Shown here: positions 5,901 through 63,575 of the stretch, piece after piece | Numbering within the stretch: position 1 is the stretch's first letter | Layout of the letters: each line of letters opens with the position of its first letter | Virus record (IMG/VR): IMGVR_UViG_3300025770_001492 | Coordinates: 1-64,000 of that record | DNA length: 64,000 nucleotides | Strand: one strand, 5' to 3' | Position numbers and translations under genes: made by a program | The notes under the pieces: generated by a model | The model's database searches: none | The model's input: only the letters and a program-made list of their open reading frames with translations | Told to the model about the DNA's origin: nothing

Positions 5901-6971
5901 TTAACTTCCAGATATTAACTCGCTAATTGAGCCATGTTCATGAGTCCTTCTGATTGACTGGGCAAATATTTTAGCTGTTTCGATAATGTGAGTATTCTTC
6001 AGAGTTGATTCATTTAATCTGAATGGAGGGATTGTGTCTGAAATAACTAATCGAGGGACTTCCTTCAAAAAATCATTCGCCTCGCCAACAAACAGTCCGT
6101 GAGTGGCGCATGCTGCCCACGGTTCTCCTCCGTGGCTTATAATCGCATCTATGCTTGACTTTATTGTTTTCCCGCTAGAAATCATATCGTCAAGTATGAT
6201 GACTCTCTTGTCTTTAACATCACCGATTATATCATCTCCAACAGTTACCGTTGAAGACATCTTTCCATTGTCGCCAGCGTTAGACACTCTTTCTTTATCG
6301 ACAGAAGCTAGGCCAATCTTAACGTCTTCACCCAATAAAGACTTTATTTTTTTTTCTAAAGAATTTCTAAATCTTCGGCACCTTCCTATGCCTCCAGAAT
6401 CGGGAGCAAGCACCACTAAGTTGTCTAAATCATTTTTCAAAGGATCTGGAATAGAATTCTTTTCATCAAAACCAAGCAAATAATCAACAAGAAGGTTTTT
6501 AATTTCTAGATTGTCAACAGTTAATGGCCGGTCACCAATTGGTGCAGAGTTTTGATAGGCTCCTAAATTATGAACATCCATCGTGATTGCACGCCTGACT
6601 CCCATGCTCTTAAGCAAATGACCAACATACTTTGTTGTAATTGGCGCACGACTCTCTGTTTTTCTGTCTTGTCTTGAAAATCCCCAATAAGGAGATATTA
6701 CGCTAATTTCCCCAGAGGACGCATCAATCAGCGAGCCAATAAAAGTAAGTAAATTCCAGTACTTTTCACCCACGCTCTGATCGTCATCTCCATAGGTAGA
6801 CTGAATGACGTAGCACTCAAAGCCTCTAACGTTTACATCGCTTTTTAGATAAGACTCAGTATCAGAAAAAAAGTTCTCAGTATGAGGAGAAACTGATAGG
6901 TCTAAATGGTCTGCAACTTTCTTCGCATAGTCGCCTGTTCCACTCAGGCCAAAGATTCGAACGTCTTTCAT
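5901..6971 (-). CDS. prs: ribose-phosphate pyrophosphokinase (PRPP synthetase)
   Basis: FSDTE, SRQDRK, MDVH, APDSGG, DKER, ILDDMISSGKT, ATHGLF. Confidence 0.93.
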   Translation of the reverse strand: MKDVRIFGLSGTGDYAKKVADHLDLSVSPHTENFFSDTESYLKSDVNVRGFECYVIQSTYGDDDQSVGEKYWNLLTFIGSLIDASSGEISVISPYWGFSRQDRKTESRAPITTKYVGHLLKSMGVRRAITMDVHNLGAYQNSAPIGDRPLTVDNLEIKNLLVDYLLGFDEKNSIPDPLKNDLDNLVVLAPDSGGIGRCRRFRNSLEKKIKSLLGEDVKIGLASVDKERVSNAGDNGKMSSTVTVGDDIIGDVKDKRVIILDDMISSGKTIKSSIDAIISHGGEPWAACATHGLFVGEANDFLKEVPRLVISDTIPPFRLNESTLKNTHIIETAKIFAQSIRRTHEHGSISELISGS

Positions 6972-32199: not shown

Positions 32200-33236
32200 C
32201 CTTTTTCCTCTTTAGCTATATCTTGGGAGATTTCAGATCCATCAACTTCTTCTTCACAACCTGTGCAGTTTTTAGACTTAATAAATTTCGTATGGACAAC
32301 CACAGCAGGCGGGATTGCCAAAGTTTTTTCTACATTTACATCTTTTTCAACAAACTCTTCTCTTGCTTTTCCCTTTGCAATCTGTATCCGTATATATTTC
32401 AGATAGGACCTAGTGTCCTTCTCTAAATTGTATTTTTTTTCTTCATCTTCAAGAGATTCATCTCCTGTAGGGTGGAACACTCTTGCATCACATATTATAG
32501 GAACTTTTCCAAAGTCTTCATGAACTTTATGTTTAACGCCAGATCGACTAATTTTACAACAAAGCATTTCATCAGTTATTTTTAAATAACTGCATTTTTT
32601 GGACGACTTCATATAGGTGCTAATTTGATCATGCGGAAAAAATAAATGATCATAAAATTTGTCAAAATTTTCTAATGAAAACCAACCATAAGATCTCATG
32701 AATTCTAAACAGGATTCTGTCCACAACATACATGGTCCAGCAATTACTTGACTTTGTGGTTCGAAATTCTTAGAAAAAGGCATTCCTACTTCATTGTGAA
32801 AATAATGATGCATTTGCAAGTCTATTTCTGGAAACGGCCAAATAGTTCCCCCAAAGAATATTTTTTTATCCCTTCTGCACTTGTTAGAAAACTCCGACAA
32901 GAATGGTCCGGTACATATACAATCTGAGTCAAGGGTGATTAAGTCATTGAATATATGGTGCTTTTCAAAATACTCAATACCACCAACGAAACTTCTTAAG
33001 CATCCTCGTCCCCATCCGTTTTTTGTTCCTGTGAAGAATACGAATTCTTCTCCATAAATGTCTGATAATTGGTTGGCCATTAATTCATTGTTGTCAACAA
33101 TGAATGTAAAAATATAATCATCAACATTAGGATGAAAGAACCTAAACGCTTCTTCATTGTCGATCATGAATTCAGGATGTTTGTGTCCCAGAACTATTAC
33201 TAACGTTTTGTGTTCACCTGAATTTTCAAGAATCAT
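32172..33236 (-). CDS. glycosyltransferase-like protein
   Basis: TLDSD DxD motif; cluster context. Confidence 0.5.
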   Translation of the reverse strand: MILENSGEHKTLVIVLGHKHPEFMIDNEEAFRFFHPNVDDYIFTFIVDNNELMANQLSDIYGEEFVFFTGTKNGWGRGCLRSFVGGIEYFEKHHIFNDLITLDSDCICTGPFLSEFSNKCRRDKKIFFGGTIWPFPEIDLQMHHYFHNEVGMPFSKNFEPQSQVIAGPCMLWTESCLEFMRSYGWFSLENFDKFYDHLFFPHDQISTYMKSSKKCSYLKITDEMLCCKISRSGVKHKVHEDFGKVPIICDARVFHPTGDESLEDEEKKYNLEKDTRSYLKYIRIQIAKGKAREEFVEKDVNVEKTLAIPPAVVVHTKFIKSKNCTGCEEEVDGSEISQDIAKEEKGCNKTTKFI

Positions 33237-34908
33237 TATTCAAACCACAAATATAAAATGCCGACTGTATTTTCAGTATATCTATTAGCTTTCCGCTAAT
33301 GTTTCCTCTGCAACAATACTCCCATTCTGCCTCTGTAGGAAGTCTGTATTTTTTATTTTCTTTAGAAGATAAGACATCACAAAATTCAACACTATCAATC
33401 CAAGAAACATCAGTAACCGGAAATTCATCAACTTCTTTAATTGGGTTTTTTATCTTTATTTTGTAATTTTTGTAAACACTTGAATTTGAAATATTTTTTA
33501 ATGGTATTTTTTTTACACCTGTTAATTCAGCATACTGAGAAGTTGTAACTGGAGCGTCTGCCATATAGAAAGAATTCTCAATACAAACAATTTTAGAATT
33601 TGCATTCTTACCAGCCATCATAAATTCTCCAATAGGTATTTTCACCATATTTATCCCTAAAGAATTGACCCATTCAATGCCCATGTCTAATTCAGATTCC
33701 ATCAATAATCTAAACCCCAAATCATCCATGCTTTGGTCATGTCTTTTTGAATAGCGGGAAGACGATGAAATCATTGTTGGTTTAGACCTATAAGACCCTC
33801 CTCTAATTATTCTGTGTTTTTGTTTGTAGTCTAGACCGCAGCGTTCAGCTACATCTTTTACTTTATCACCTTCTTGCCGTAAGCATCTTGGCGGATCATT
33901 AGTCCACTCAGCATCAAGGCACCATTCCCAAATATTGCCATGCATGTCATATAGCCCAAACCCATTGGCCTGAAGGGATTTAACTTGTTCTGTAGACCAC
34001 CTGTCTGCAATAATTTTACGACTATCATAATTATCAGAACCATAATTAAAATTTGTATGAGAGAAAATATTTTTATACAAAAAGGCTTTAGTTTCACATT
34101 TCCAATTAGAACATATTTTTTCCCATATTAAATCATTTTCCCTAAAAAATTCTGGCAACTCTTTTTCAACAAGTTCTTCTTCTAAAATTTTAAATCCTGA
34201 AGATGATATGCAGTCTTCATAGGAAAAAACAGGATCTTTTAACCTGCGGATATTTTTATCTGACCTAGTCTGAGAATCATCAAAACACAAATGAATGTAA
34301 GCCAAATTATACTCACTCTTACATCCATATCTTGAAGACCATGGAAAACATTTTATGTATATTTTCCCTTCAGGAGAAAGCATTTCTTTTATTTTAGACA
34401 ATTCTTCGGTTGGGTTCTCCATATAATCCAAAACATCCCACAATAGAACAACATCATATGGAGCATGTTGTTTAACGAACTCAAAGTCGTCTGAAAGGTT
34501 TATTTCGCCAGGTTTCCACTGTTTCTCTATATCGTAACCAATTGAAGTTTTAGCATTCTTTTTTGACTCAAAAACAACATGCCCTTCTCCGCATCCATAA
34601 TCTAAGAAATTTAAATCTTCCAAAATAAGCTTTTCACAGATTTGACCTGCTCTGGTTTTTTTATCATTTTCTGTTTTAACTAAAAGATTTGTAGGAACAG
34701 CAAGAGGCCAAAACCCAAACACAGGCCATTCAAGTTTTTTGTAGATCCTCTTATTTTTGAATTCAAAATTTGAATCCTCTTTCAGCTTTTTAATTACGAA
34801 CTCGAAAGATCCATGCGAACTACAAATTTCAACAATTTCAGACAACTCTATAAAACCTTTATTCCTTAAAAAAGTTAAAATGGTTCGATATGAGTATTCA
34901 GAATTCAT
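33226..34908 (-). CDS. SAM methyltransferase with an inserted, circularly permuted FGE-sulfatase (SUMF1) domain
   Basis: LDYGCGEG, then GLYDMHGNIWEW...RGGS...GFRL ahead of MVKIPIGEF...LPTEAEWEY. Confidence 0.8.
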   Translation of the reverse strand: MNSEYSYRTILTFLRNKGFIELSEIVEICSSHGSFEFVIKKLKEDSNFEFKNKRIYKKLEWPVFGFWPLAVPTNLLVKTENDKKTRAGQICEKLILEDLNFLDYGCGEGHVVFESKKNAKTSIGYDIEKQWKPGEINLSDDFEFVKQHAPYDVVLLWDVLDYMENPTEELSKIKEMLSPEGKIYIKCFPWSSRYGCKSEYNLAYIHLCFDDSQTRSDKNIRRLKDPVFSYEDCISSSGFKILEEELVEKELPEFFRENDLIWEKICSNWKCETKAFLYKNIFSHTNFNYGSDNYDSRKIIADRWSTEQVKSLQANGFGLYDMHGNIWEWCLDAEWTNDPPRCLRQEGDKVKDVAERCGLDYKQKHRIIRGGSYRSKPTMISSSSRYSKRHDQSMDDLGFRLLMESELDMGIEWVNSLGINMVKIPIGEFMMAGKNANSKIVCIENSFYMADAPVTTSQYAELTGVKKIPLKNISNSSVYKNYKIKIKNPIKEVDEFPVTDVSWIDSVEFCDVLSSKENKKYRLPTEAEWEYCCRGNISGKLIDILKIQSAFYICGLNNDS

Positions 34909-37522: not shown

Positions 37523-38329
37523 ATGATAAAATGGTTGGCATGGAAAGTAATTTCAAATTACGTGGCTGGCGAAACTGCTGAAGAGGCTGTTCAACTGGCG
37601 AAAAACTTGGAAGAAAGAGGCTTTTCGTCAACCATATCTCTCTTGGGCGAAGGATGCACAATTAATGAATCGAATCTGGCCTTTTGGGAATACATTCTAC
37701 TCATTGGATTGCTTGAGAAAAAAGAATTGAATGATTGTGGAATATCCATGAAATATACCCATCTGGGGGAATATAACATAACTAGAATGTTTGAGTTGAT
37801 TGGGCGTACAAGAGTCAATTTTCCAATATGCCTAGACATGGAAAACTACAAAAACAAGAGATACATAATAGACTTATATAACAAATTAAAAAAACAAAAA
37901 AAAACATCAACAGTTCTCCAGTCTAGAATAAGGGACTCAATAGAAGATATAAAACAAATTGATAATGTTAGAATTTGCAAGGGAATTTACAAAGAGAGCA
38001 AAGACGTTAGTTTGTTTGGAGAAGACGTAAATTCAAACTTTAAAAAACTAGTGGAACACTGTGTAGAAGAAAACAAATATGTCTCTATAGCGACACACGA
38101 CCTAGATCTAATTAAAGATTGTGAAAAAATACTAAAAGAACATAAAAAATGTGAATTCCAGTTTTTGTACGGAGTTCCAATAGAAGAAGAAGCAAACAGA
38201 TTGAAAGAATCAGGTCAAAAAGTAAGATACTACATACCATATGGAAAAAATTGGTTCCAATATTGTTGGCGAAGAGCAAAAGAAAATCCAAACATAGTCA
38301 AACATGTTATTAAGAACATGTTTGGATAG
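37523..38329 (+). CDS. monofunctional proline dehydrogenase
   Basis: YVAGET, LDME, RICKGIYKE, IATHD, FQFLYG, YIPYG, RRAKENP. Confidence 0.9.
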   Translation: MIKWLAWKVISNYVAGETAEEAVQLAKNLEERGFSSTISLLGEGCTINESNLAFWEYILLIGLLEKKELNDCGISMKYTHLGEYNITRMFELIGRTRVNFPICLDMENYKNKRYIIDLYNKLKKQKKTSTVLQSRIRDSIEDIKQIDNVRICKGIYKESKDVSLFGEDVNSNFKKLVEHCVEENKYVSIATHDLDLIKDCEKILKEHKKCEFQFLYGVPIEEEANRLKESGQKVRYYIPYGKNWFQYCWRRAKENPNIVKHVIKNMFG

Positions 38330-39608
38330 CGATAATTTCATCTATAAACTTGTTCAGAGAGTCACAGCAAACTTTTGAGGACGAATCTATATTGACCGGC
38401 TCTAAAACAGTTCCATTTGAAAAACTAAAAGAATTTGTTTCAAATTTATCTGTTATTACATGTTTAATAGATCTTCTTGTAAAGTCTAAATCAAATCTTT
38501 CACCATTACTGTCCATGCCGGTATTCACCAAAAATACTTTACAATCGTGCTGATTAATTTTTTTTACCAACATATCACTATACTTCTCAACTGGAAGCGG
38601 CATAAATGGTCCTCCATAACATGGAGAAAACACCTTCTTTATTTCGTTAACTCCATCTTCCGTTCCCGGCATCTTGCTTGTATATCCAGTCTCAAAAAAC
38701 AGCTTAATTGCATCTCCCTTTATTCGACTAATTGGAGGCACAACTCCTGTTACGTCCATAGTTAAGAAAAATATGTTATTTGGATGGTCGAAAACATGAT
38801 CGCACTCATTCAGATCCGACAACCATGAATTTTTAATCAATTTTGCTGGATAACTGCTTCTGGCGTTATCGTGACCGATATTTTCCTCAATTAGGACATC
38901 GTTCTCTCTAGCGGCCTCCATAGCTTCGTAAATCGCCTCATGGGTCTTTGGATGAAGTCCCTGTGTCTTTGCATAGCACCCCGTCTCGATCAATTCTAGG
39001 CCATTATCAGACCAAGATAGCTCATCGTCCCCAATTAACTTGAAATCAGGATCACTACTTAGTGTAGTTTTTCCTGTGCCACTCAACCCAAACATCAGAT
39101 TTGTTGTGCATTTGTATGTGAAACTGCCGCAATGCATTGGCAATTTGTCCTCAAGTGGAAGCTCAAATCCCATTGCTGTGAATACTGATTTTTTAATTTC
39201 TCCAAGATAACTCGTGCCAGCTATTAAAATCAAATTTGTATCAAGATTAATCCAAATTGTTGGATCAACGTCTATATCAAGATTGTGAAGAATTAACCAA
39301 TCTGCACTTTTTATCAAAGGTCTATTAGTGTAAGCGTCAGACATCGCATCAAACATGTTCTGAACAAACTTCGCATGCCAATCACTTGTTGTTCGAACAT
39401 TGAAATTCTTACTATTCGATCTGAAGTGCAAACTGTGACTGTATGAATCTAAATCGTTAAATAAAGAGAACATATTTTCAAAATCTTCGATTTTTCCAAT
39501 TTGAACATCCTCATTACGACTTTTATCCAAGAGTCTTGTCGCATCTCCAAAGAAAAATTTTCCTTTAGGAGATCTTCCTGTCGGTGTTGTTTTTATTTTA
39601 ACATTCAT
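38310..39608 (-). CDS. pckA: phosphoenolpyruvate carboxykinase (ATP), shortened
   Basis: TGRSPK, FGLSGTGKTTLS, IGDDE, GCYAK, GVVPPIS, FSPCYGGPF, LVNTG. Confidence 0.92.
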   Translation of the reverse strand: MNVKIKTTPTGRSPKGKFFFGDATRLLDKSRNEDVQIGKIEDFENMFSLFNDLDSYSHSLHFRSNSKNFNVRTTSDWHAKFVQNMFDAMSDAYTNRPLIKSADWLILHNLDIDVDPTIWINLDTNLILIAGTSYLGEIKKSVFTAMGFELPLEDKLPMHCGSFTYKCTTNLMFGLSGTGKTTLSSDPDFKLIGDDELSWSDNGLELIETGCYAKTQGLHPKTHEAIYEAMEAARENDVLIEENIGHDNARSSYPAKLIKNSWLSDLNECDHVFDHPNNIFFLTMDVTGVVPPISRIKGDAIKLFFETGYTSKMPGTEDGVNEIKKVFSPCYGGPFMPLPVEKYSDMLVKKINQHDCKVFLVNTGMDSNGERFDLDFTRRSIKHVITDKFETNSFSFSNGTVLEPVNIDSSSKVCCDSLNKFIDEIIAIQTCS

Positions 39609-39614
39609 TATCAA

Positions 39615-48821: not shown

Positions 48822-49886
48822 TTAGTTTCCAGTTTTATCCAAGTAAATCGGGTCACGTTGCTTGATCATAAGACGACCAATGAGACCATGACTAGATTCA
48901 GTCATAGGTCGAATTACAATTCCCTCACGCAAACGATCTTTGTTAATTTTAGACTTCCCATTAGACATTTCAACAATAGTCTTATCACCCAACCATTCAC
49001 GTAGAGTAACGTTCTCTCCAAGAATAGGTGCCATGCGATCCTCTAGCTTCTTATCACGAAGAATAGAAACTAGCCTATTAGCATCTGTCCATTTACCATC
49101 GATTTTAAGATCAAAGAACCTCACAGTCTTTTCACTGAGTTTGTAATAGTTACCTTGAATGGCAGTGCCATGAGCTTCACCATAAAGAGTTACAGATACT
49201 GCACTCTCATCAGAAAGAATCTCTTTCGCAAGATCAATGATCTTCTCACGACGAGCAACTTCCCACAGATAGTGTTCTCCACCATCTTTTTCAAGGATGG
49301 AATGATTGCGTTGGTTTACATGTACGCTTCCACTAACAGTTACAGTTACAGAAAAATTTTGACCTTCTACTTTTTCAGTAACAATAATTGACACACCACT
49401 GTCAAGAATACTTTGCACAACAACTGGATAGTTTTCACAACCCTCAATGTCGTATTTTGATACACCATCTGGCAATGGCACAAGATCACAATTCTGACAA
49501 GAGATAGGCTCTGGTTCATATTTGGTAATGCCGAGAGCATCAGTAAGGTCCATGCCATGCATATCATCTACATCAACGTTCAGATGACTAGCAACTGATG
49601 CTACGTCAGCGATGAATCCCTGAGAGATTTCTTTGCGCAGCTTGACAGTTTTTACACGGTTGTGCTCTTTACCCGCCAACATGGTGCCAAGCCCAAATAA
49701 TTCGATTAACTCTGGAGTCATCACAGACTCTACAGGGAAATAAACTACTTTATCTCCAATGTCATAAGGAACATTTGAGATAAACTGATAACCAAGATCG
49801 TTTAACTTATAGATAGTCAAACGATCTGCGTTCGGATGTTGGATAACTTGATCAATAGTTTTGACTTCGACTTCAAATTTGCTCAT
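48822..49886 (-). CDS. RNA ligase, DRB0094 (Rnl2-like) family
   Basis: HPNADRL N-terminal domain, RVKTVKLRKEISQG, TEKVEGQN, YGE, FFD, REGIVIR. Confidence 0.9.
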   Translation of the reverse strand: MSKFEVEVKTIDQVIQHPNADRLTIYKLNDLGYQFISNVPYDIGDKVVYFPVESVMTPELIELFGLGTMLAGKEHNRVKTVKLRKEISQGFIADVASVASHLNVDVDDMHGMDLTDALGITKYEPEPISCQNCDLVPLPDGVSKYDIEGCENYPVVVQSILDSGVSIIVTEKVEGQNFSVTVTVSGSVHVNQRNHSILEKDGGEHYLWEVARREKIIDLAKEILSDESAVSVTLYGEAHGTAIQGNYYKLSEKTVRFFDLKIDGKWTDANRLVSILRDKKLEDRMAPILGENVTLREWLGDKTIVEMSNGKSKINKDRLREGIVIRPMTESSHGLIGRLMIKQRDPIYLDKTGN

Positions 49887-50119
49887 TTCATTCCTCTTTT
49901 AGACGAATCTAAATTTCGCATGGCACTCAATATGGAAAGAGTAAATATTCCAGAAGTTGCCAAATGGAGTCCAATATATACAAAAATTGCTGGTCCGTGA
50001 AACACAGCACAAGTGATTGCCCAAATAGCAATCACAATTATAAGCATGTATTTAAGTTCTAAGTTTTTCACCACATTAATCGCTTCAAATGTTCCGCCTG
50101 TGTATAAGATTGACGACAT
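49883..50119 (-). CDS. small membrane protein starting with a cytidylyltransferase remnant
   Basis: ILYTGGTFE matches the N-terminus of the 13304-13720 gene, followed by two TM-like segments. Confidence 0.5.
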   Translation of the reverse strand: MSSILYTGGTFEAINVVKNLELKYMLIIVIAIWAITCAVFHGPAIFVYIGLHLATSGIFTLSILSAMRNLDSSKRGMK

Positions 50120-50124
50120 TATAG

Positions 50125-51063
50125 TTAACCTCCAACTATTTTGAATATACCATTTAAATCGTCATCTCTAGAACAGGAAGTAGTGTGTAAGAATATAGAA
50201 TCGTTATCAAAAATTTTACTAAAATTAAACCTACAAGGATCGTCGTATGTAAACTCTCTAAAATCTTTTATGTCCCAACCGTGAGAACAAATTTCTAAAC
50301 CACTTTTTATTTTTTTCTGATCGTTGTTTGCAGTGTTTATCGCCAACTCAATTAAATGCTCGTCTTGTATCCACCTTGTGCTACGACCTATTTTTTTTGA
50401 AACAATCTTTTGTACTTCTAAGATATTGTCTAGCCCCTGTTTACTGCTTAGTGAAAGATTACATTTCTCAAGTCTAGTAACCAAAAGCTCGCAAAACTCT
50501 CTTGTTAGTAGTGCAAATCCAGTATTAAATACGGTGTCTTGATTTAACGTAATATCTAAGTGTTCAACGAAAGCTTTTCGTATAAAAAATCTAGCTTTTA
50601 GATACCAAGGGAAAGGTAAAGCGTCCCAATCTGGAATCGGCTCCACCGTTTCCAAAGCCTGTAAACCATTTTTTTCTTGTTCGGGGAAATCTTTATGCTG
50701 AATATAGCTAATGCCATCACGACACCAATCTCTGATATTATTGATGTGTCTTTTTTTATTTATAATAAATGTATCTAGATCCATAAATAATCCATAATCA
50801 TCTCCAGAATCTAAAAAATCATATATTCTAACAAACTTCCTCAAGAGAGGGCAAAGGGGTAAATTGATTAATTGTCTAACTAGATAGTGCTTATCGTCTA
50901 AAACGTTTAGCTTTATGCCATCTTGAGAAAAATAACTAAACTGAGAAGCCAAAGATGTCAAATGCCACTGTTCAACGACTGGCATCGTATTTAATAAATA
51001 GGCCGATATTTTAACCATCTTCTTTCCTGTCTGTAAAAAATTTATAAAGTCTTCCCGCCGCAT
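50125..51063 (-). CDS. GT-A-like protein, paralogue of 13717-14628
   Basis: Shared LNTMP, NVLDD.HYLVRQ, PLLRK, YDFLDSG.DYGLF.DLDT. Confidence 0.6.
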   Translation of the reverse strand: MRREDFINFLQTGKKMVKISAYLLNTMPVVEQWHLTSLASQFSYFSQDGIKLNVLDDKHYLVRQLINLPLCPLLRKFVRIYDFLDSGDDYGLFMDLDTFIINKKRHINNIRDWCRDGISYIQHKDFPEQEKNGLQALETVEPIPDWDALPFPWYLKARFFIRKAFVEHLDITLNQDTVFNTGFALLTREFCELLVTRLEKCNLSLSSKQGLDNILEVQKIVSKKIGRSTRWIQDEHLIELAINTANNDQKKIKSGLEICSHGWDIKDFREFTYDDPCRFNFSKIFDNDSIFLHTTSCSRDDDLNGIFKIVGG

Positions 51064-51166
51064 CTAGTTTATGCTCTTTAAATTCTAATAAGCCGTTATC
51101 ATTTATAAAAACATCCTCATCAATATTAATTTTACACTCTGGGAGGGAAGCAGCAAAATCTGTAGT

Positions 51167-54524: not shown

Positions 54525-54759
54525 TGCAGTCCTCAGTTTTCTGCACAGGTACTACTTGATGATCATGTCGCTTGCAGTTATGCACATGCTTGCGACGACA
54601 CCAATTGTTGTATGCGTTGGCTATGGGAATTGAAATTAAAGATAGCCCAAGGCCGCCAAATAAAATCAATCCCTCAACTATAAACCCACAAACACAAGCT
54701 AACATCAGCAACAATCCGTTCCAGAACAACAATCGTTTTGTATTACAGGAATCCCACAC
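54487..54759 (-). CDS. small membrane protein
   Basis: Two hydrophobic segments; start uncertain. Confidence 0.4.
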   Translation of the reverse strand: MWDSCNTKRLLFWNGLLLMLACVCGFIVEGLILFGGLGLSLISIPIANAYNNWCRRKHVHNCKRHDHQVVPVQKTEDCNDSPRVTRLPPI

Positions 54760-55136
54760 TTGTCCTTAGCCAAACAATCTGTCTTTGTAGGCGTCAGATA
54801 AAATACTCCGTCCTTAAACTCTACACCCCATATGCCAATCGTCTCTGCTTGGTATTCCACCTGAACGAGCCAATCGCCGGGTTTTAAGCTTTTTTCTGCG
54901 GCTTCAATTATAGATGAAAGTTTCTTAGGCGACAAGCGATGATCATAATCATCAGCAGTCCAAAGTTGAAAACAAATATAAGTTGATTGACGCTGATAGC
55001 CGCCACAATCAACAAAACACTTATCGGACACACCAACCTCTGTGATGTGAAAATGCTCTGGAACATGGCCGTTGGGCAACTTGAATCTTAAAACGTCAAG
55101 ATTGCCAACGTGCTTTTTGAATTCTGATAGTATCAT
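54705..55136 (-). CDS. DUF6428-like protein
   Basis: VPEHFHITEVG, FVDCGG, FQLW, VEYQAETI, TDCLAKDKCG. Confidence 0.75.
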   Translation of the reverse strand: MILSEFKKHVGNLDVLRFKLPNGHVPEHFHITEVGVSDKCFVDCGGYQRQSTYICFQLWTADDYDHRLSPKKLSSIIEAAEKSLKPGDWLVQVEYQAETIGIWGVEFKDGVFYLTPTKTDCLAKDKCGIPVIQNDCCSGTDCC

Positions 55137-55258: not shown

Positions 55259-55330
55259 TACCGCATGGGAGTTTCGATCTCCCTCCTGCTGTTAGAAAGA
55301 CAGCCGACCTAGCCAGTAGTCGAATGCGGC
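55259..55330 (-). tRNA. trnE: tRNA-Glu(UUC)
   Basis: GCCGCAT/ATGCGGT acceptor, GCTGT-CTTTCTA-ACAGC anticodon arm, atypical T loop ATCGAAA. Confidence 0.82.
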
Positions 55331-55338
55331 ATTCTAAG

Positions 55339-55411
55339 CTCTCCGAGTAGGACTTGAACCTACAACCTAGCGGTTAACAGCCGCTCGCTCTACCAATTGA
55401 GCTATCGGAGA
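55339..55411 (-). tRNA. trnN: tRNA-Asn(GUU)
   Basis: TCTCCGA/TCGGAGA acceptor, CTGTTAA loop, canonical D and T arms. Confidence 0.95.
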
Positions 55412-55417
55412 TTAAAG

Positions 55418-55455
55418 AGCCAACCGTGAGACTCGAACTCACAACCTGTTGATTA
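55418..55455 (-). tRNA. trnT: 3' half of split tRNA-Thr(UGU)
   Basis: TAA-TCAAC-AGGTT-GTGAG-TTCGAGT-CTCAC-GGTTGGC-T; complements the 5' half at 55614-55648. Confidence 0.85.
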
Positions 55456-55456
55456 G

Positions 55457-55530
55457 AGCGAATGACGAGATTCGAACTCGCAATACTTCTGGGTGGAAAC
55501 CAGACGCTTTACCTAATAAGCTTCATTCGC
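55457..55530 (-). tRNA. trnG: tRNA-Gly(UCC), nested inside split tRNA-Thr
   Basis: GCGAATG/CATTCGC, TCTGG-TTTCCAC-CCAGA, U73. Confidence 0.9.
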
Positions 55531-55537
55531 AACTGAG

Positions 55538-55613
55538 TCGGGGAGACAGGATTTGAACCTGCGATAACTCCCGGCCCCAAACCGGGCGGACGACCAGACT
55601 GTCCAACTCCCCG
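55538..55613 (-). tRNA. trnP: tRNA-Pro(UGG), nested inside split tRNA-Thr
   Basis: CGGGGAG/CTCCCCG, CCCGG-TTTGGGG-CCGGG, C1-G72 and A73. Confidence 0.92.
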
Positions 55614-55648
55614 CAAATCAACTGCTCTGCCAATTGAGCTAGGTTGGC
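55614..55648 (-). tRNA. trnT: 5' half of split tRNA-Thr(UGU)
   Basis: GCCAACC-TA-GCTC-AATTGGCA-GAGC-A-GTTGA-TTTG. Confidence 0.85.
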
Positions 55649-55655
55649 ATTTCTA

Positions 55656-56057
55656 CTAACCAACCCCCGTTCCGGGAGGTTGGTATTTCCCAGTTATACC
55701 AAAATATTCCCAATCGCATTCTGTACAAATAAAGTTATCATATGAACTATCTCTTTCGTGTTCGCTGTATCGAACAAGTTGTTCTGTATCTTTTTCGCAA
55801 TTCGGGCAATGCATCTCATCTCTTTCCCATCCGTCTGCCAGCCAACGATGTACTTCCGAAGTCAGGTCGGATTTCTTCTTTTTCTTTTTGAGTTTTTTGA
55901 AAAGTCGTTTAATTTGTTCATACGCAACTTCAGCGGTCAGATCTGTAGACTTATTGGACTCTAGATCCACTATGATATCGACTTTATTTGCGAACATCCG
56001 TAGATCACCTTCAAATTCTGAGTGACCTCCAGTTATTAAATACTTATTTTCTTCCAT
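55656..56057 (-). CDS. hypothetical protein with zinc ribbon
   Basis: HCPNC...CTEC. Confidence 0.55.
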   Translation of the reverse strand: MEENKYLITGGHSEFEGDLRMFANKVDIIVDLESNKSTDLTAEVAYEQIKRLFKKLKKKKKKSDLTSEVHRWLADGWERDEMHCPNCEKDTEQLVRYSEHERDSSYDNFICTECDWEYFGITGKYQPPGTGVG

Positions 56058-56071
56058 TTCATTACTCCATT

Positions 56072-56107
56072 AAAAAAACCCACTTAGGCGTTGCCTAAGT
56101 GGGTTTT
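56072..56107. terminator. rho-independent terminator
   Basis: AAAACCCACTTAGGC/GCCTAAGTGGGTTTT. Confidence 0.88.
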
Positions 56108-61943: not shown

Positions 61944-62146
61944 TTAATTTTCACCCTTCTCTTTCGCAGAGAGGTATGGACAACTTTTTTTCAGTTTTAA
62001 CTTTTTTTGGCGTTGTTTTGTTGATTCCGACATCAGAAAATGCCAAAAGCATGTTTTCGCCTTTTCTGGATCGCCTAACTGCTGCCTCGTTCAAAGCTTT
62101 AATAGTTTCCAAGCACCACATAGTTAACTTTCTGTAAATGATGAAG

Positions 62147-62206
62147 GATTCGAACTTGCGGCCTCAAGGTTATGAGCCTTGCGAGATACCCCTTCTCCAT
62201 CCTGCG
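62147..62206 (-). pseudogene. 3'-truncated initiator-like tRNA-Met(CAU)
   Basis: CGCAGGA start, GAGA/TCTC D stem, CAAGG-CTCATAA-CCTTG arm, TTCGAAT loop; 3' T-stem and acceptor strand do not pair. Confidence 0.7.
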
Positions 62207-62939: not shown

Positions 62940-63575
62940 CTAATCCTCTATCTCGGCTCGAATTTTTTCTATTGCGTTAAACGCACAGTGTCTTGCCCCC
63001 GCCCGTGTCATGTCGAAGCAATCACCTATTTCTTGCCAAGATTTATTCTCTAGAAATCTCATTTTCAGCATTTGTTTGTCTCTTTGATGTTTCTCTCCTT
63101 CAGAATCATCACAACTGAAAATTTTATCAAAATCCAAATCTGGGAGTTTTTCCTCTGCTTGTTCTTCAGGAAAATCAAGATTGTCTAACTCTGAAATTCT
63201 AACCAAAGGAATGTTTCTCTTTTTCCTCTGATTGAACTTAAACGAATCTAAGATTCTATTTCTCATGCATTTCCATGCGTAAGTCGAGAAGGCATCATTT
63301 ATGTGTGGATCATACGTTGACGCCGCATCCCATAAGCCAATCAAGGCAATTGAATATTCTTCTGAATCTCGAACCTCAATCGAATTTTTGACATAACGAG
63401 ACGCACATTTGAGAGCCAACCCAATGTGGTCTTCAACCGAAATAGGAACAATCTTTTCTTCTAGAAAAATTGTTTCTACAGGAATTTCAGATTTTAAAGG
63501 AGCAGAAATCAGATCTAACATAAACCAGTCTTTGGCGTTTAAAAGTAAATCATCCCTGATTCTGTTGTTGTTCAA
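62940..63575 (-). CDS. sigma-70 family RNA polymerase sigma factor (regions 2 and 4)
   Basis: IGLWDAASTYDP...AFSTYAWKCMRNRILD; MRFLENKSWQEIG HTH. Confidence 0.88.
   Translation of the reverse strand: MNNNRIRDDLLLNAKDWFMLDLISAPLKSEIPVETIFLEEKIVPISVEDHIGLALKCASRYVKNSIEVRDSEEYSIALIGLWDAASTYDPHINDAFSTYAWKCMRNRILDSFKFNQRKKRNIPLVRISELDNLDFPEEQAEEKLPDLDFDKIFSCDDSEGEKHQRDKQMLKMRFLENKSWQEIGDCFDMTRAGARHCAFNAIEKIRAEIED

What the first reader, a model, noticed from the sequence alone, without database searches (positions are those of the whole stretch)
55418..55648. Nested tRNA genes: a tRNA-Thr(UGU) split in its anticodon by an insert made of two complete tRNA genes
Seen in sequence (minus strand): a tRNA 5' half (55648-55614, ending ...GTTGA-TTTG) runs with no spacer into a complete tRNA-Pro(UGG). 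Then come CTCAGTT, a complete tRNA-Gly(UCC), one C, and a tRNA 3' half (55455-55418, TAA-TCAAC...GGTTGGC-T). Joining the halves gives a 73-nt cloverleaf with 7/7 acceptor, 4/4 D, 5/5 anticodon and 5/5 T stem pairs and loop UU-UGU-AA. G1-C72/C2-G71 fits Thr identity. The 158-nt insert is not a group I intron. Established knowledge: RNase P cleavage at the Pro 5' end would leave a 3'-OH exactly at the end of the Thr 5' half, and 3' processing of Gly would free the Thr 3' half. Inference: tRNA-Thr matures by tRNA-guided excision plus ligation, possibly by the phage DRB0094 ligase, making Thr(UGU) supply depend on a phage enzyme. If cleavage occurs right after the Gly discriminator, an 8-nt loop (UUUG-C-UAA) results, a possible frameshift suppressor. 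Intron-containing tRNA predictions exist for some megaphages, but I know of no characterised system with two nested tRNAs acting as the intron.
Basis: partly seen in the sequence, partly recalled or inferred. Interest (0 to 1): 0.95.

Follow-up and report, generated by a model that had tools for sequence, protein, structure and literature searches.

The report
Phage tRNA-Thr gene split by rearrangement
A marine jumbo phage really does carry a threonine tRNA gene cut in two around two complete tRNA genes, but close relatives with an uninterrupted copy and tell-tale short repeats at the joints show it arose by recent DNA shuffling, and it is most likely a broken gene rather than a new way of making a tRNA.

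Summary
On the minus strand a 35-nt tRNA-Thr(UGU) 5' piece runs straight into tRNA-Pro. Then come CTCAGTT, tRNA-Gly, one C and the 38-nt Thr 3' piece. ARAGORN calls the joined pieces tRNA-Thr. At least six independent assemblies carry the arrangement, but all are one clone.

Relatives change the interpretation. Between the same two flanking genes they carry: (B) Pro-CTAAT-intact Thr; (C) Thr 5' piece|Pro-CTAAT-intact Thr; or another cassette with permuted Asn halves, a Val gene with a 4-nt deletion or a 37-nt insertion, and other tRNA stumps.

Both junctions in the window carry rearrangement scars. The TG ending the 5' piece is the Pro leader of variant B. The "extra C" plus TAAT is the CTAAT spacer fused to loop nucleotides 36-39. 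The split is therefore best explained by duplication and deletion in a hypervariable tRNA cluster, leaving a probably dead Thr gene.

An Rnl5-type ligase is encoded 5.5 kb away. But there is no evidence of constraint, the C would give an 8-nt loop, and a relative with split Asn lacks the ligase gene at the syntenic position. I give the functional reading about 12%.

The parts
55614..55648 (-). tRNA-Thr(UGU) 5' fragment, positions 1-35, ending UUUG
   Evidence: Sequence. Joins with 55418-55455 to give an ARAGORN tRNA-Thr. Identical to the 5' part of the intact Thr in L035, L039 and L042. The last two bases, TG, match the Pro leader of variant B.
55538..55613 (-). tRNA-Pro(UGG), complete
   Evidence: ARAGORN; Rfam 46.8 bits. 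Shows compensatory D-stem and anticodon-stem changes in L034, L036 and L039.
55531..55537 (-). Pro-Gly spacer CTCAGTT
   Evidence: Sequence. Conserved in L034 and L036.
55457..55530 (-). tRNA-Gly(UCC), complete
   Evidence: ARAGORN; Rfam 63.9 bits.
55456..55456 (-). Single C after the Gly discriminator. Read here as the first base of the usual trailer and spacer (CTAAT).
   Evidence: By my reading of the printed sequences, 9 of 11 tRNA trailers in this locus and its variants start with CT. Variants B and C have the spacer CTAAT in front of the intact Thr.
55418..55455 (-). tRNA-Thr(UGU) 3' fragment, positions 36-73. Its first four bases, TAAT, match the end of the CTAAT spacer.
   Evidence: Sequence; ARAGORN on the joined pieces.
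55339..55411 (-). tRNA-Asn(GUU), complete
   Evidence: ARAGORN; Rfam 72.5 bits.
55259..55330 (-). tRNA-Glu(UUC), with an atypical T loop (ATCGAAA)
   Evidence: ARAGORN. Rfam 43.9 bits, found only in the permissive search.
55656..56057 (-). DUF7219 gene, the left anchor of the variable tRNA cassette
   Evidence: Pfam. Homologues P0001-P0019 were used to fetch relatives.
54705..55136 (-). DUF6428 gene, the right anchor of the cassette. Its ribosome-binding and start region is duplicated around the other cassette type in L029.
   Evidence: Pfam.
48822..49886 (-). Rnl5-family ATP-dependent RNA ligase. An accessory gene, and only a candidate partner for the split tRNA.
   Evidence: PF09414 plus PF21189; PDB 5cot/6vt* at E = 3e-15; phrog_968. 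The gene is cleanly absent from relative L029.

Best explanation
The split tRNA-Thr is a genuine genomic arrangement. It was produced at the DNA level by recent illegitimate recombination in a hypervariable tRNA cassette of a jumbo phage. The source contig is 245.5 kb, and the host is probably a member of Bacteroidota.

The inferred ancestral array is ..AAAT-TG-Pro-(CTCAGTT-Gly)-CTAAT-Thr-CTTTAA-Asn-Glu.

Step 1: a duplication joined Thr position 35 to Pro position +1, at the TTG shared by the Thr anticodon loop (..GATTTG) and the Pro leader (..AAATTG). This is a tandem-amplification junction. It left a 35-nt Thr 5' fragment in front of Pro, as still seen next to an intact Thr in variant C.

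Step 2: a 39-nt deletion between the TAAT of the CTAAT spacer and the TAAT at Thr positions 36-39 removed the 5' part of the full copy. This left Gly-C-TAATCAAC..., which is what the window shows.

A one-step templated insertion of TG|Pro-Gly-C|TAAT into a break in the anticodon loop gives the same product and is equally allowed. In that case variant C would be an A x B recombinant that crossed over at the shared CCCCGACT.

Shown: the three variants, the 33-nt indel, the 38-nt exact repeat in C, and the abundance of other tRNA debris in the same locus. Inferred: the order of events, the Gly-CTAAT-Thr intermediate, and that the two Thr pieces are no longer made into a working tRNA. On that reading the phage relies on the host for tRNA-Thr(UGU), while Pro, Gly, Asn and Glu are processed normally.
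For: (1) Variants between the same flanking genes. Variant B (L035, L040, L042) is AAAT-TG-Pro-CTAAT-intact Thr. Variant C (L039) is Thr 5' piece|Pro-CTAAT-intact Thr. A-like contigs (L034, L036) match the window arrangement as far as they reach.

(2) B, C and A-like contigs share the same upstream flank, with the same differences from the window. The rearrangements are therefore recent and lie within one lineage.

(3) B and A differ by a clean 33-nt indel covering Thr 1-33. The next two bases, TG, are common to both.

(4) In C, the repeat AAT plus Thr 1-35 is 38 nt and exact.

(5) The window's 3' junction C-TAAT-CAAC equals the CTAAT spacer fused to loop TAAT.

(6) The same locus in relatives is littered with other tRNA fragments:
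- permuted Asn halves;
- Val(UAC), intact in L060, with a 4-nt deletion in L029 (no longer called by ARAGORN), and with a 37-nt insertion in L067-L072;
- a 10-nt stump of another Thr gene fused to the ORF stop (L046, L067, L068);
- a hybrid gene in L031.

(7) Many assemblies break inside the Thr 5' repeat (L037, L038, L046).

(8) An HNH endonuclease gene passes the Pfam cut-off about 0.8 kb from the cassette in some lineages. SegB-driven tandem amplification of a phage tRNA locus with microhomology at a tRNA 5' end is documented (PMC13096335; PMC2330249).

(9) There is no signal of constraint on the pieces. All variant-A contigs are one clone with 0-1 differences in 3.2 kb. The 0/35 changes against L034 are compatible with the local 4-8% divergence.
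Against: Both Thr pieces are flawless and abut exactly (1-35 and 36-73), with nothing lost or duplicated. The permuted Asn pieces of the other cassette also abut exactly (1-34 and 35-73). Two exact abutments are a mild coincidence under pure neutrality. The coincidence is weakened because the AT-rich anticodon loop is the part of a tRNA gene most likely to share microhomology with AT-rich spacers.

Variant A is the most widely sampled genotype. Its flanking protein is indexed in 67 blocks of the collection, against 32 for the B/C lineage.

ACA is the phage's most used Thr codon at 40%, and every other phage tRNA matches the top codon of its family. Losing Thr(UGU) should therefore cost something.

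The postulated intermediate Gly-CTAAT-Thr was not observed. The downstream part of the B and C contigs could not be retrieved.
Confidence: 0.72

Rival explanations
1. Functional split tRNA. The cluster is transcribed as one RNA. Host RNase P cutting at Pro +1 leaves the Thr 5' half with a 3'-OH at G35. 3' processing of Gly frees the Thr 3' half with a 5'-phosphate. The halves stay paired through the acceptor and anticodon stems, and the phage Rnl5 ligase seals the loop. The rearrangement origin described above would still hold, but the product would be tolerated or selected because it can be repaired at the RNA level.
For: The minimum-free-energy fold is three nested cloverleaves. The end chemistry matches an ATP-dependent ligase without any need for a kinase-phosphatase (established knowledge). 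An Rnl5 ligase is encoded 5.5 kb away. Exact abutment of halves is seen twice, for Thr here and for Asn in the other cassette. The halves are intact in the most abundant clone. ACA is the top Thr codon. The physiological role of Rnl5 ligases is unknown (PMC5397189).
Against: RNase Z cuts directly after the discriminator and is inhibited by a following C (PMC7479834). The C would therefore stay and give an 8-nt loop.

Characterised Rnl5 enzymes seal nicks in duplexes, not loop breaks (PMC4408790, PMC7261155).

Relative L029 has split Asn halves but lacks the ligase gene at the syntenic position.

Variant C carries the 5' half next to an intact Thr, so the junction does not need a function to exist.

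Clearly dead tRNAs are tolerated in the same locus.

No covariation or excess conservation was found.

Four full-text searches for nested, interrupted, split or permuted tRNA genes found no precedent for tRNA genes nested in a tRNA gene, or for phage tRNA halves matured this way.
Confidence: 0.12
2. The halves are ligated with the extra C retained. This would give a tRNA-Thr with an 8-nt anticodon loop (UUUGCUAA) that reads four-base codons or promotes frameshifting.
For: Canonical RNase Z cleavage would leave the C. The same single C precedes the Asn 3' half in the other cassette.
Against: The C is simply the first base of the trailer that follows most tRNAs in this locus. No frameshift-requiring genes were noticed among the ORFs examined. 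All the objections to ligation listed above apply here too.
Confidence: 0.03
3. The fragments have a role other than as a tRNA. For example, the 5' piece could act as a structured leader that affects RNase P processing of Pro, or free tRNA halves could act as decoys for host anticodon nucleases.
For: The 5' piece|Pro junction occurs in several backgrounds (window, L034, L036, L039).
Against: Variant B makes Pro without the 5' piece. Nothing specific points to such a role.
Confidence: 0.05
4. Assembly artefact or chimera.
For: The locus is repeat-rich, and many contigs break in it.
Against: The sequence is identical in at least six independent assemblies made with different assemblers and from different samples.
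Confidence: 0.01

Closest known systems
Tandem amplification and rearrangement of phage tRNA clusters stimulated by homing endonucleases (T4/T6 SegB; PMC2330249, PMC13096335)
   Same: A phage tRNA cluster acts as a recombination hot spot. A novel junction forms at microhomology right at a tRNA 5' end. Variants coexist in populations. An HNH endonuclease gene lies near the cassette in some relatives.
   Different: No endonuclease gene was identified next to the cluster in the window itself. Here the outcome is fragmentation of a tRNA gene rather than copy-number gain. The cleavage site and enzyme are unknown.
Split and permuted tRNA genes of Archaea and red algae (Nanoarchaeum, Caldivirga, Cyanidioschyzon; PMC3218864, PMC3978253)
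   Same: Complementary 5' and 3' tRNA pieces are broken in the anticodon loop. In the second cassette, the 3' half of Asn lies upstream of its 5' half.
   Different: Those systems use a bulge-helix-bulge motif, a splicing endonuclease and an RtcB-type ligase. No such motif is present in the fold here. Neither the host splicing machinery nor expression of a joined product could be examined here.
Phage T4 Pnkp/Rnl1 repair of tRNA-Lys nicked in the anticodon loop
   Same: A phage-encoded ATP-dependent RNA ligase, and a tRNA with a broken anticodon loop held together by its stems.
   Different: The ligase here is Rnl5-type, not Rnl1. No Pnkp was seen among the ORFs scanned. The break would be genomic, not inflicted by a nuclease.
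Group I introns in bacterial and phage tRNA anticodon loops (PMC3984707)
   Same: An intervening sequence inside the anticodon loop of a tRNA gene.
   Different: The insert is two tRNA genes with no ribozyme core, and there is no Rfam intron match.

Membership tests
tRNA gene fragments (pseudogene pieces) made by illegitimate recombination | An uninterrupted copy of the same gene at the same locus in close relatives | tested here: met
   L035, L042 (variant B) and L039 (variant C) carry an intact Thr(UGU) with an identical 5' half, and their flanks are about 92% identical to the window.
tRNA gene fragments (pseudogene pieces) made by illegitimate recombination | Short sequence identities (microhomology) or spacer remnants at the novel junctions | tested here: met
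   The TG/TTG at the 5' junction equals the Pro leader of variant B. C-TAAT at the 3' junction equals the CTAAT spacer. In variant C the repeat starts at AAT.
tRNA gene fragments (pseudogene pieces) made by illegitimate recombination | Sequence decay of the pieces, or loss of complementarity | tested here: not met
   Both pieces are perfect, with 21/21 stem pairs. However, all variant-A contigs are one clone, so there has been little time for decay.
tRNA gene fragments (pseudogene pieces) made by illegitimate recombination | No mature joined RNA is produced | not testable with these tools
   This needs tRNA-seq or metatranscriptome reads.
Intron-containing tRNA: group I self-splicing intron | A ribozyme core (P3-P9) in the intervening sequence | tested here: not met
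   No Rfam intron family matches, at gathering or at permissive thresholds. The insert is fully accounted for by two tRNAs.
Split or permuted tRNA: archaeal/eukaryal type | A bulge-helix-bulge motif at the exon boundaries | tested here: not met
   In the minimum-free-energy fold, the junction nucleotides lie in a three-way multiloop. There are no 3-nt bulges separated by a 4-bp helix.
Split or permuted tRNA: archaeal/eukaryal type | Complementary halves that rebuild a canonical cloverleaf | tested here: met
   ARAGORN calls joined Thr and joined Asn from L029/L060.
Rnl5 (DraRnl/NgrRnl) RNA ligase, for ORF 48822-49886 | An N-terminal OB domain plus an adenylyltransferase domain with the motif I lysine | tested here: met
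   PF21189 at residues 7-92 and PF09414 at residues 167-331. The ORF aligns with NgrRnl over residues 40-328, and the lysine aligns (query KVEG, NgrRnl KLDG).
Rnl5 (DraRnl/NgrRnl) RNA ligase, for ORF 48822-49886 | Sealing activity on a tRNA anticodon-loop break | not testable with these tools
   Characterised members seal duplex nicks (PMC4408790, PMC5397189). Activity on loop breaks is unknown.
T4-type tRNA repair (Pnkp + Rnl1) | A polynucleotide kinase-phosphatase partner gene | tested here: inconclusive
   None was found among about 45 ORFs of the window scanned with Pfam or PHROGs. The other 180 kb of the genome was not seen.

The most novel reading that the evidence does not exclude
This phage group tolerates, and perhaps exploits, fragmented tRNA genes. 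Thr is nested around Pro-Gly, and Asn is circularly permuted between Gly and Val. Host RNase P and 3' processing of the abutting complete tRNAs would cut out halves with 3'-OH and 5'-phosphate ends, which an ATP-dependent RNA ligase reseals. That would be protein-only, tRNA-guided 'splicing' in a bacterial system, and it would give the orphan Rnl5 ligase family its first physiological substrate.
Probability: 0.12. Interest if true: 0.9.

Novelty: new member of a known kind. Interest (0 to 1): 0.42.

Why it matters
If the pieces are dead, which is my best reading, the locus is still a clean natural snapshot of how split and permuted tRNA gene arrangements arise de novo. Duplication, microhomology-mediated deletion and cassette exchange are all caught as coexisting variants (B, C, A and the permuted Asn cassette) in one phage population. 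That bears on the old debate over whether split tRNA genes are ancestral or derived.

The case also warns annotators. tRNA finders miss such pieces, and exact complementarity of halves is not evidence of function.

If the minority reading is true, it would be a new tRNA maturation pathway and a first function for Rnl5 ligases. That is cheaply testable.

Tried and rejected
- Chance resemblance: rejected. ARAGORN calls the joined pieces, and they are identical to an intact Thr in relatives.
- Misassembly: rejected. At least six independent assemblies agree.
- Group I intron or another known RNA in the insert: rejected.
- Bulge-helix-bulge splicing: rejected on the fold.
- Integrase-type insertion into the anticodon loop: rejected. 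There is no duplicated core at the two junctions, and the insert is only 158 nt.
- Retro-insertion of a processed Pro-Gly dimer, which the mature-looking 5' end and the discriminator+C had suggested: set aside. The internal CTCAGTT spacer is genomic, and the C and TG are explained by neighbouring spacers.
- Purifying selection on the halves: no power. Variant A is clonal, and 0/35 changes against L034 is compatible with 4-8% local divergence.

Searches that gave nothing useful:
- GenBank phages by DNA and by flanking proteins.
- IMG/VR scans with Gly and Pro words, the junction pattern and the DUF7219 alignment. These returned only the source contig or unrelated phages.
- GTDB genomes.
- More distant DUF6428 genes, which are not next to tRNAs.
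- The ligase's 312-aa neighbour. Four of 18 family members match Glyco_transf_34 (best E = 5.8e-06), so it looks like a glycosyltransferase, not an RNA enzyme.

Full report
**1. The observation**

The window is bases 1-64000 of a 245,522-bp viral contig, IMGVR_UViG_3300025770_001492, also known as Ga0209362_1000007.

- a 35-nt tRNA 5' piece, 55648-55614, ending GTTGA-TTTG;
- tRNA-Pro(UGG), 55613-55538, with no spacer in between;
- CTCAGTT;
- tRNA-Gly(UCC), 55530-55457;
- one C, 55456;
- a 38-nt tRNA 3' piece, 55455-55418.

tRNA-Asn(GUU) and tRNA-Glu(UUC) follow.

ARAGORN and Rfam call Pro, Gly and Asn, and Rfam calls Glu in the permissive search. ARAGORN calls the joined pieces tRNA-Thr(tgt) with all 21 stem pairs intact and a canonical 7-nt loop. 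The 231-nt transcript folds, as its minimum-free-energy structure, into three nested cloverleaves. No intron or other Rfam family lies in the insert.

The same sequence occurs in at least six independent assemblies from different samples and assemblers. It is therefore neither chance nor a misassembly. These assemblies are one clone, with 0-1 differences in 3.2 kb, so they say nothing about selection.

**2. Context**

Most ORFs of 150 aa or more run on the minus strand. The part of the genome in the window is rich in auxiliary genes: glycosyl-, sulfo- and methyltransferases, PEPCK, PRPP synthetase, a ClpX-like ATPase, ParB and a sigma-70-like factor.

The tRNA cluster sits between a DUF7219 gene (55656-56057) and a DUF6428 gene (54705-55136). 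The named cellular homologues of the DUF6428 gene, at 50-60% identity, are all from Bacteroidota, which hints at the host.

ORF 48822-49886 is an Rnl5-family RNA ligase. The ORFs of the window that I scanned contain no Pnkp, RtcB or CCA-adding enzyme. The ligase's 312-aa neighbour belongs to a small family in which 4 of 18 members match a glycosyltransferase family.

Every tRNA the phage encodes matches the most used codon of its family: ACA 40%, CCA 43%, GGA 43%, GAA 72% and AGA 41%.

**3. Relatives**

GenBank phages, IMG/VR and GTDB genomes hold no diverged relative. The large protein collection does. The DUF7219 protein has homologues at 98% and 81-86% identity on many metagenomic contigs. 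I fetched those contigs and contigs carrying the DUF6428 protein. Together they show that the DNA between these two genes is hypervariable.

Variants of the window-type cassette:
- **A**: the window arrangement. It is also seen, as far as their contigs reach, in the diverged L034 and L036.
- **B** (L035, L040, L042): ..GTAGAAAT-TG-Pro-CTAAT-intact Thr(UGU).
- **C** (L039): ..GTAGAAAT-Thr 5' piece|Pro-CTAAT-intact Thr(UGU).

The intact Thr of B and C has the same first 48 nt as the joined window gene. B, C and the A-like L036/L037 share the same upstream flank, with the same differences from the window. These rearrangements therefore happened recently, within one lineage.

A second cassette type (L029, L030, L032, L033, L060, L067-L072) holds the following:
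- a different intact Thr;
- a different Gly;
- then C plus the 3' half of an Asn (from U35), a 12-nt spacer, and the 5' half of the same Asn (to G34), which runs with no spacer into tRNA-Val(UAC).

Joined, these halves are called tRNA-Asn by ARAGORN.

The Val gene is intact in L060. It has a 4-nt deletion in L029, L030 and L033, where it is no longer callable. It has a 37-nt insertion at the same site in L067-L072.

Other contigs show a 10-nt stump of a Thr gene fused to the ORF stop (L046, L067, L068) and a hybrid gene (L031). Many assemblies break inside the repeated Thr 5' piece (L037, L038).

In L029 the second cassette is bracketed by a 20-nt direct repeat of the DUF6428 start region. An HNH endonuclease gene passes the Pfam threshold about 0.8 kb away in some lineages.

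**4. How the split arose**

Aligned to variant B, variant A has a clean 33-nt insertion that equals Thr 1-33.

In variant C the repeated unit is AAT plus Thr 1-35, 38 nt and exact.

At the other end, the window's Gly-T-C-TAAT-CAAC is what remains if a full Thr preceded by the CTAAT spacer, as in B and C, loses the 39 nt between the spacer's TAAT and the TAAT at Thr 36-39.

The "extra C" is thus the first base of the standard trailer. By my reading of the printed sequences, 9 of 11 trailers in this locus start with CT.

The simplest history has three stages:
1. An array Pro-(Gly)-CTAAT-Thr-Asn-Glu.
2. A duplication whose junction joins Thr 35 to Pro +1 at the shared TTG.
3. Microhomology-mediated deletions.

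A single templated insertion into a break in the anticodon loop would give the same product.

Tandem amplification of a phage tRNA locus with microhomology at a tRNA 5' end, stimulated by the SegB homing endonuclease, has been shown experimentally in T6 (PMC13096335; see also PMC2330249).

The variants, indels and repeats are shown. The order of events and the Gly-CTAAT-Thr intermediate are inferred.

**5. Does it still make a tRNA?**

RNase P leaves a 3'-OH, RNase Z leaves a 5'-phosphate, and ATP-dependent ligases join exactly such ends.

Several facts keep the scheme alive:
- The halves abut exactly, in two independent cases (Thr and Asn).
- Variant A is the most widely sampled genotype.
- ACA is the top Thr codon.
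- The role of Rnl5 ligases is unknown (PMC5397189).

Against it:
- RNase Z cuts directly after the discriminator and is inhibited by a following C (PMC7479834). The C would remain and give an 8-nt loop.
- Characterised Rnl5 enzymes seal nicks in duplexes, not loop breaks (PMC4408790, PMC7261155).
- The ligase gene is an accessory gene. It is cleanly absent, at the syntenic position, from L029, which carries the split Asn.
- Variant C shows that the 5' piece|Pro junction exists beside an intact Thr.
- Unmistakably broken tRNAs persist in the same locus.
- There is no covariation or excess conservation. The 5' piece shows 0/35 changes against L034, where neighbouring sequence differs by 4-8%, which gives P of roughly 0.05-0.24.
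- Four full-text searches for nested, interrupted, split or permuted tRNA genes turned up no precedent.

Exact abutment is less surprising than it looks. The AT-rich anticodon loop is the part of a tRNA gene most likely to share microhomology with AT-rich spacers, so breakpoints concentrate there.

I put the functional reading at about 12% and the "rearrangement scar, Thr inactive" reading at about 72%.

**6. Comparison, novelty and verdict**

The closest known process is endonuclease-stimulated rearrangement of phage tRNA clusters.

The arrangement only resembles archaeal and algal split or permuted tRNA genes. There is no bulge-helix-bulge motif. The host splicing machinery and expression of a joined product could not be examined.

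It resembles T4 tRNA repair only in having a phage ligase.

As a scar it is a new example of a known kind of event. It is of moderate interest as a natural series showing how split and permuted tRNA genes are born. The minority reading would be categorically new, and it is cheap to test with tRNA-seq or a four-enzyme in vitro reaction.

Noticed in passing
L029:6599-6683 (also L060, L032, L067-L072): Circularly permuted tRNA-Asn(GUU) in the alternative cassette. The order is Gly-A-C, then the Asn 3' half (U35-73), CTTTTTTAATCAT, the Asn 5' half (1-G34), then directly tRNA-Val. The halves are identical in all contigs, even though the adjacent Gly differs at many positions between lineages. ARAGORN calls the joined halves Asn.
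   Followed up: partly
L060:178-252; L029 about 6684-6755; L067 about 405-516: tRNA-Val(UAC) exists in three states at one site in the anticodon stem. It is intact in L060. It has a 4-nt deletion in L029, L030 and L033, where it is not callable. It has a 37-nt insertion containing a small hairpin in L067-L072, which ARAGORN reads as a 36-nt 'intron'. This looks like a break hot spot or the footprint of a tiny mobile insert.
   Followed up: partly
window 62139-62201 (-): A degenerate tRNA-like sequence with a CAU anticodon, a truncated acceptor stem and mismatched T stem. Rfam scores it at 31.7 bits and ARAGORN does not call it. It is probably another tRNA remnant.
   Followed up: partly
window 48829-49905 and 50081-51161 versus L029:10575-10932: The Rnl5 ligase gene and the neighbouring 312-aa gene (its family matches Glyco_transf_34) are cleanly absent from relative L029, while the 78-aa gene between them is kept. 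This is an accessory-gene indel.
   Followed up: yes
L029:6415-6441 and 6844-6870: The alternative tRNA cassette is bracketed by a direct repeat, about 20 nt long (AAGGAAAACGAATGATACTA), of the ribosome-binding and start region of the DUF6428 gene. It looks as if the cassette was inserted or exchanged by recombination there.
   Followed up: partly
L066:1318-1674 (-): A free-standing HNH endonuclease gene (PF01844, 25.4 bits against a cut-off of 21.4), with a 186-aa gene beside it, is inserted just downstream of the DUF6428 gene in some lineages. It is a candidate driver of the local rearrangements.
   Followed up: partly
window 54705-55136 (-): The named cellular homologues of the DUF6428 protein, at 50-60% identity, are all from Bacteroidota (Tenacibaculum, Nonlabens, Algibacter, Crocinitomicaceae). 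This suggests a Bacteroidota host.
   Followed up: no
window 55259-55330 (-): tRNA-Glu(UUC) has an atypical T loop (ATCGAAA instead of TTCRANY). It scores only 43.9 bits, and the default-filter gathering-threshold Rfam scan of the whole window missed it.
   Followed up: no
window cluster and relatives (trailers after each tRNA): By my reading of the printed sequences, 9 of 11 tRNA 3' trailers begin with CT (CTCAGTT, CTAAT, CTTTAA, CTTAGAA, CTTAGAC and so on). No CCA is encoded. A conserved C74 is odd, given that C after the discriminator inhibits RNase Z.
   Followed up: no
L028:367-2543 (IMGVR_UViG_3300025924_000017, 225 kb): An unrelated jumbo phage with many unusually long tRNA calls (82-94 nt). 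Next to tRNA-Pro it has an exact tandem duplication of a tRNA T-arm, acceptor 3' strand and spacer segment. This is another case of tRNA-fragment duplication in a phage cluster.
   Followed up: no
window 56075-56107: A strong 15-bp hairpin with U-tracts on both sides, a bidirectional terminator-like element, lies just upstream of the DUF7219 gene. It produced a partial match to the Rfam trpB motif below threshold.
   Followed up: no
window 38310-39614, 5901-6971, 62940-63575, 33226-34908: Auxiliary genes that are unusual for a phage: PEP carboxykinase, PRPP synthetase, a sigma-70-like factor, and a methyltransferase fused to an FGE-sulfatase domain. They sit among many sulfo- and glycosyltransferases.
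   Followed up: no
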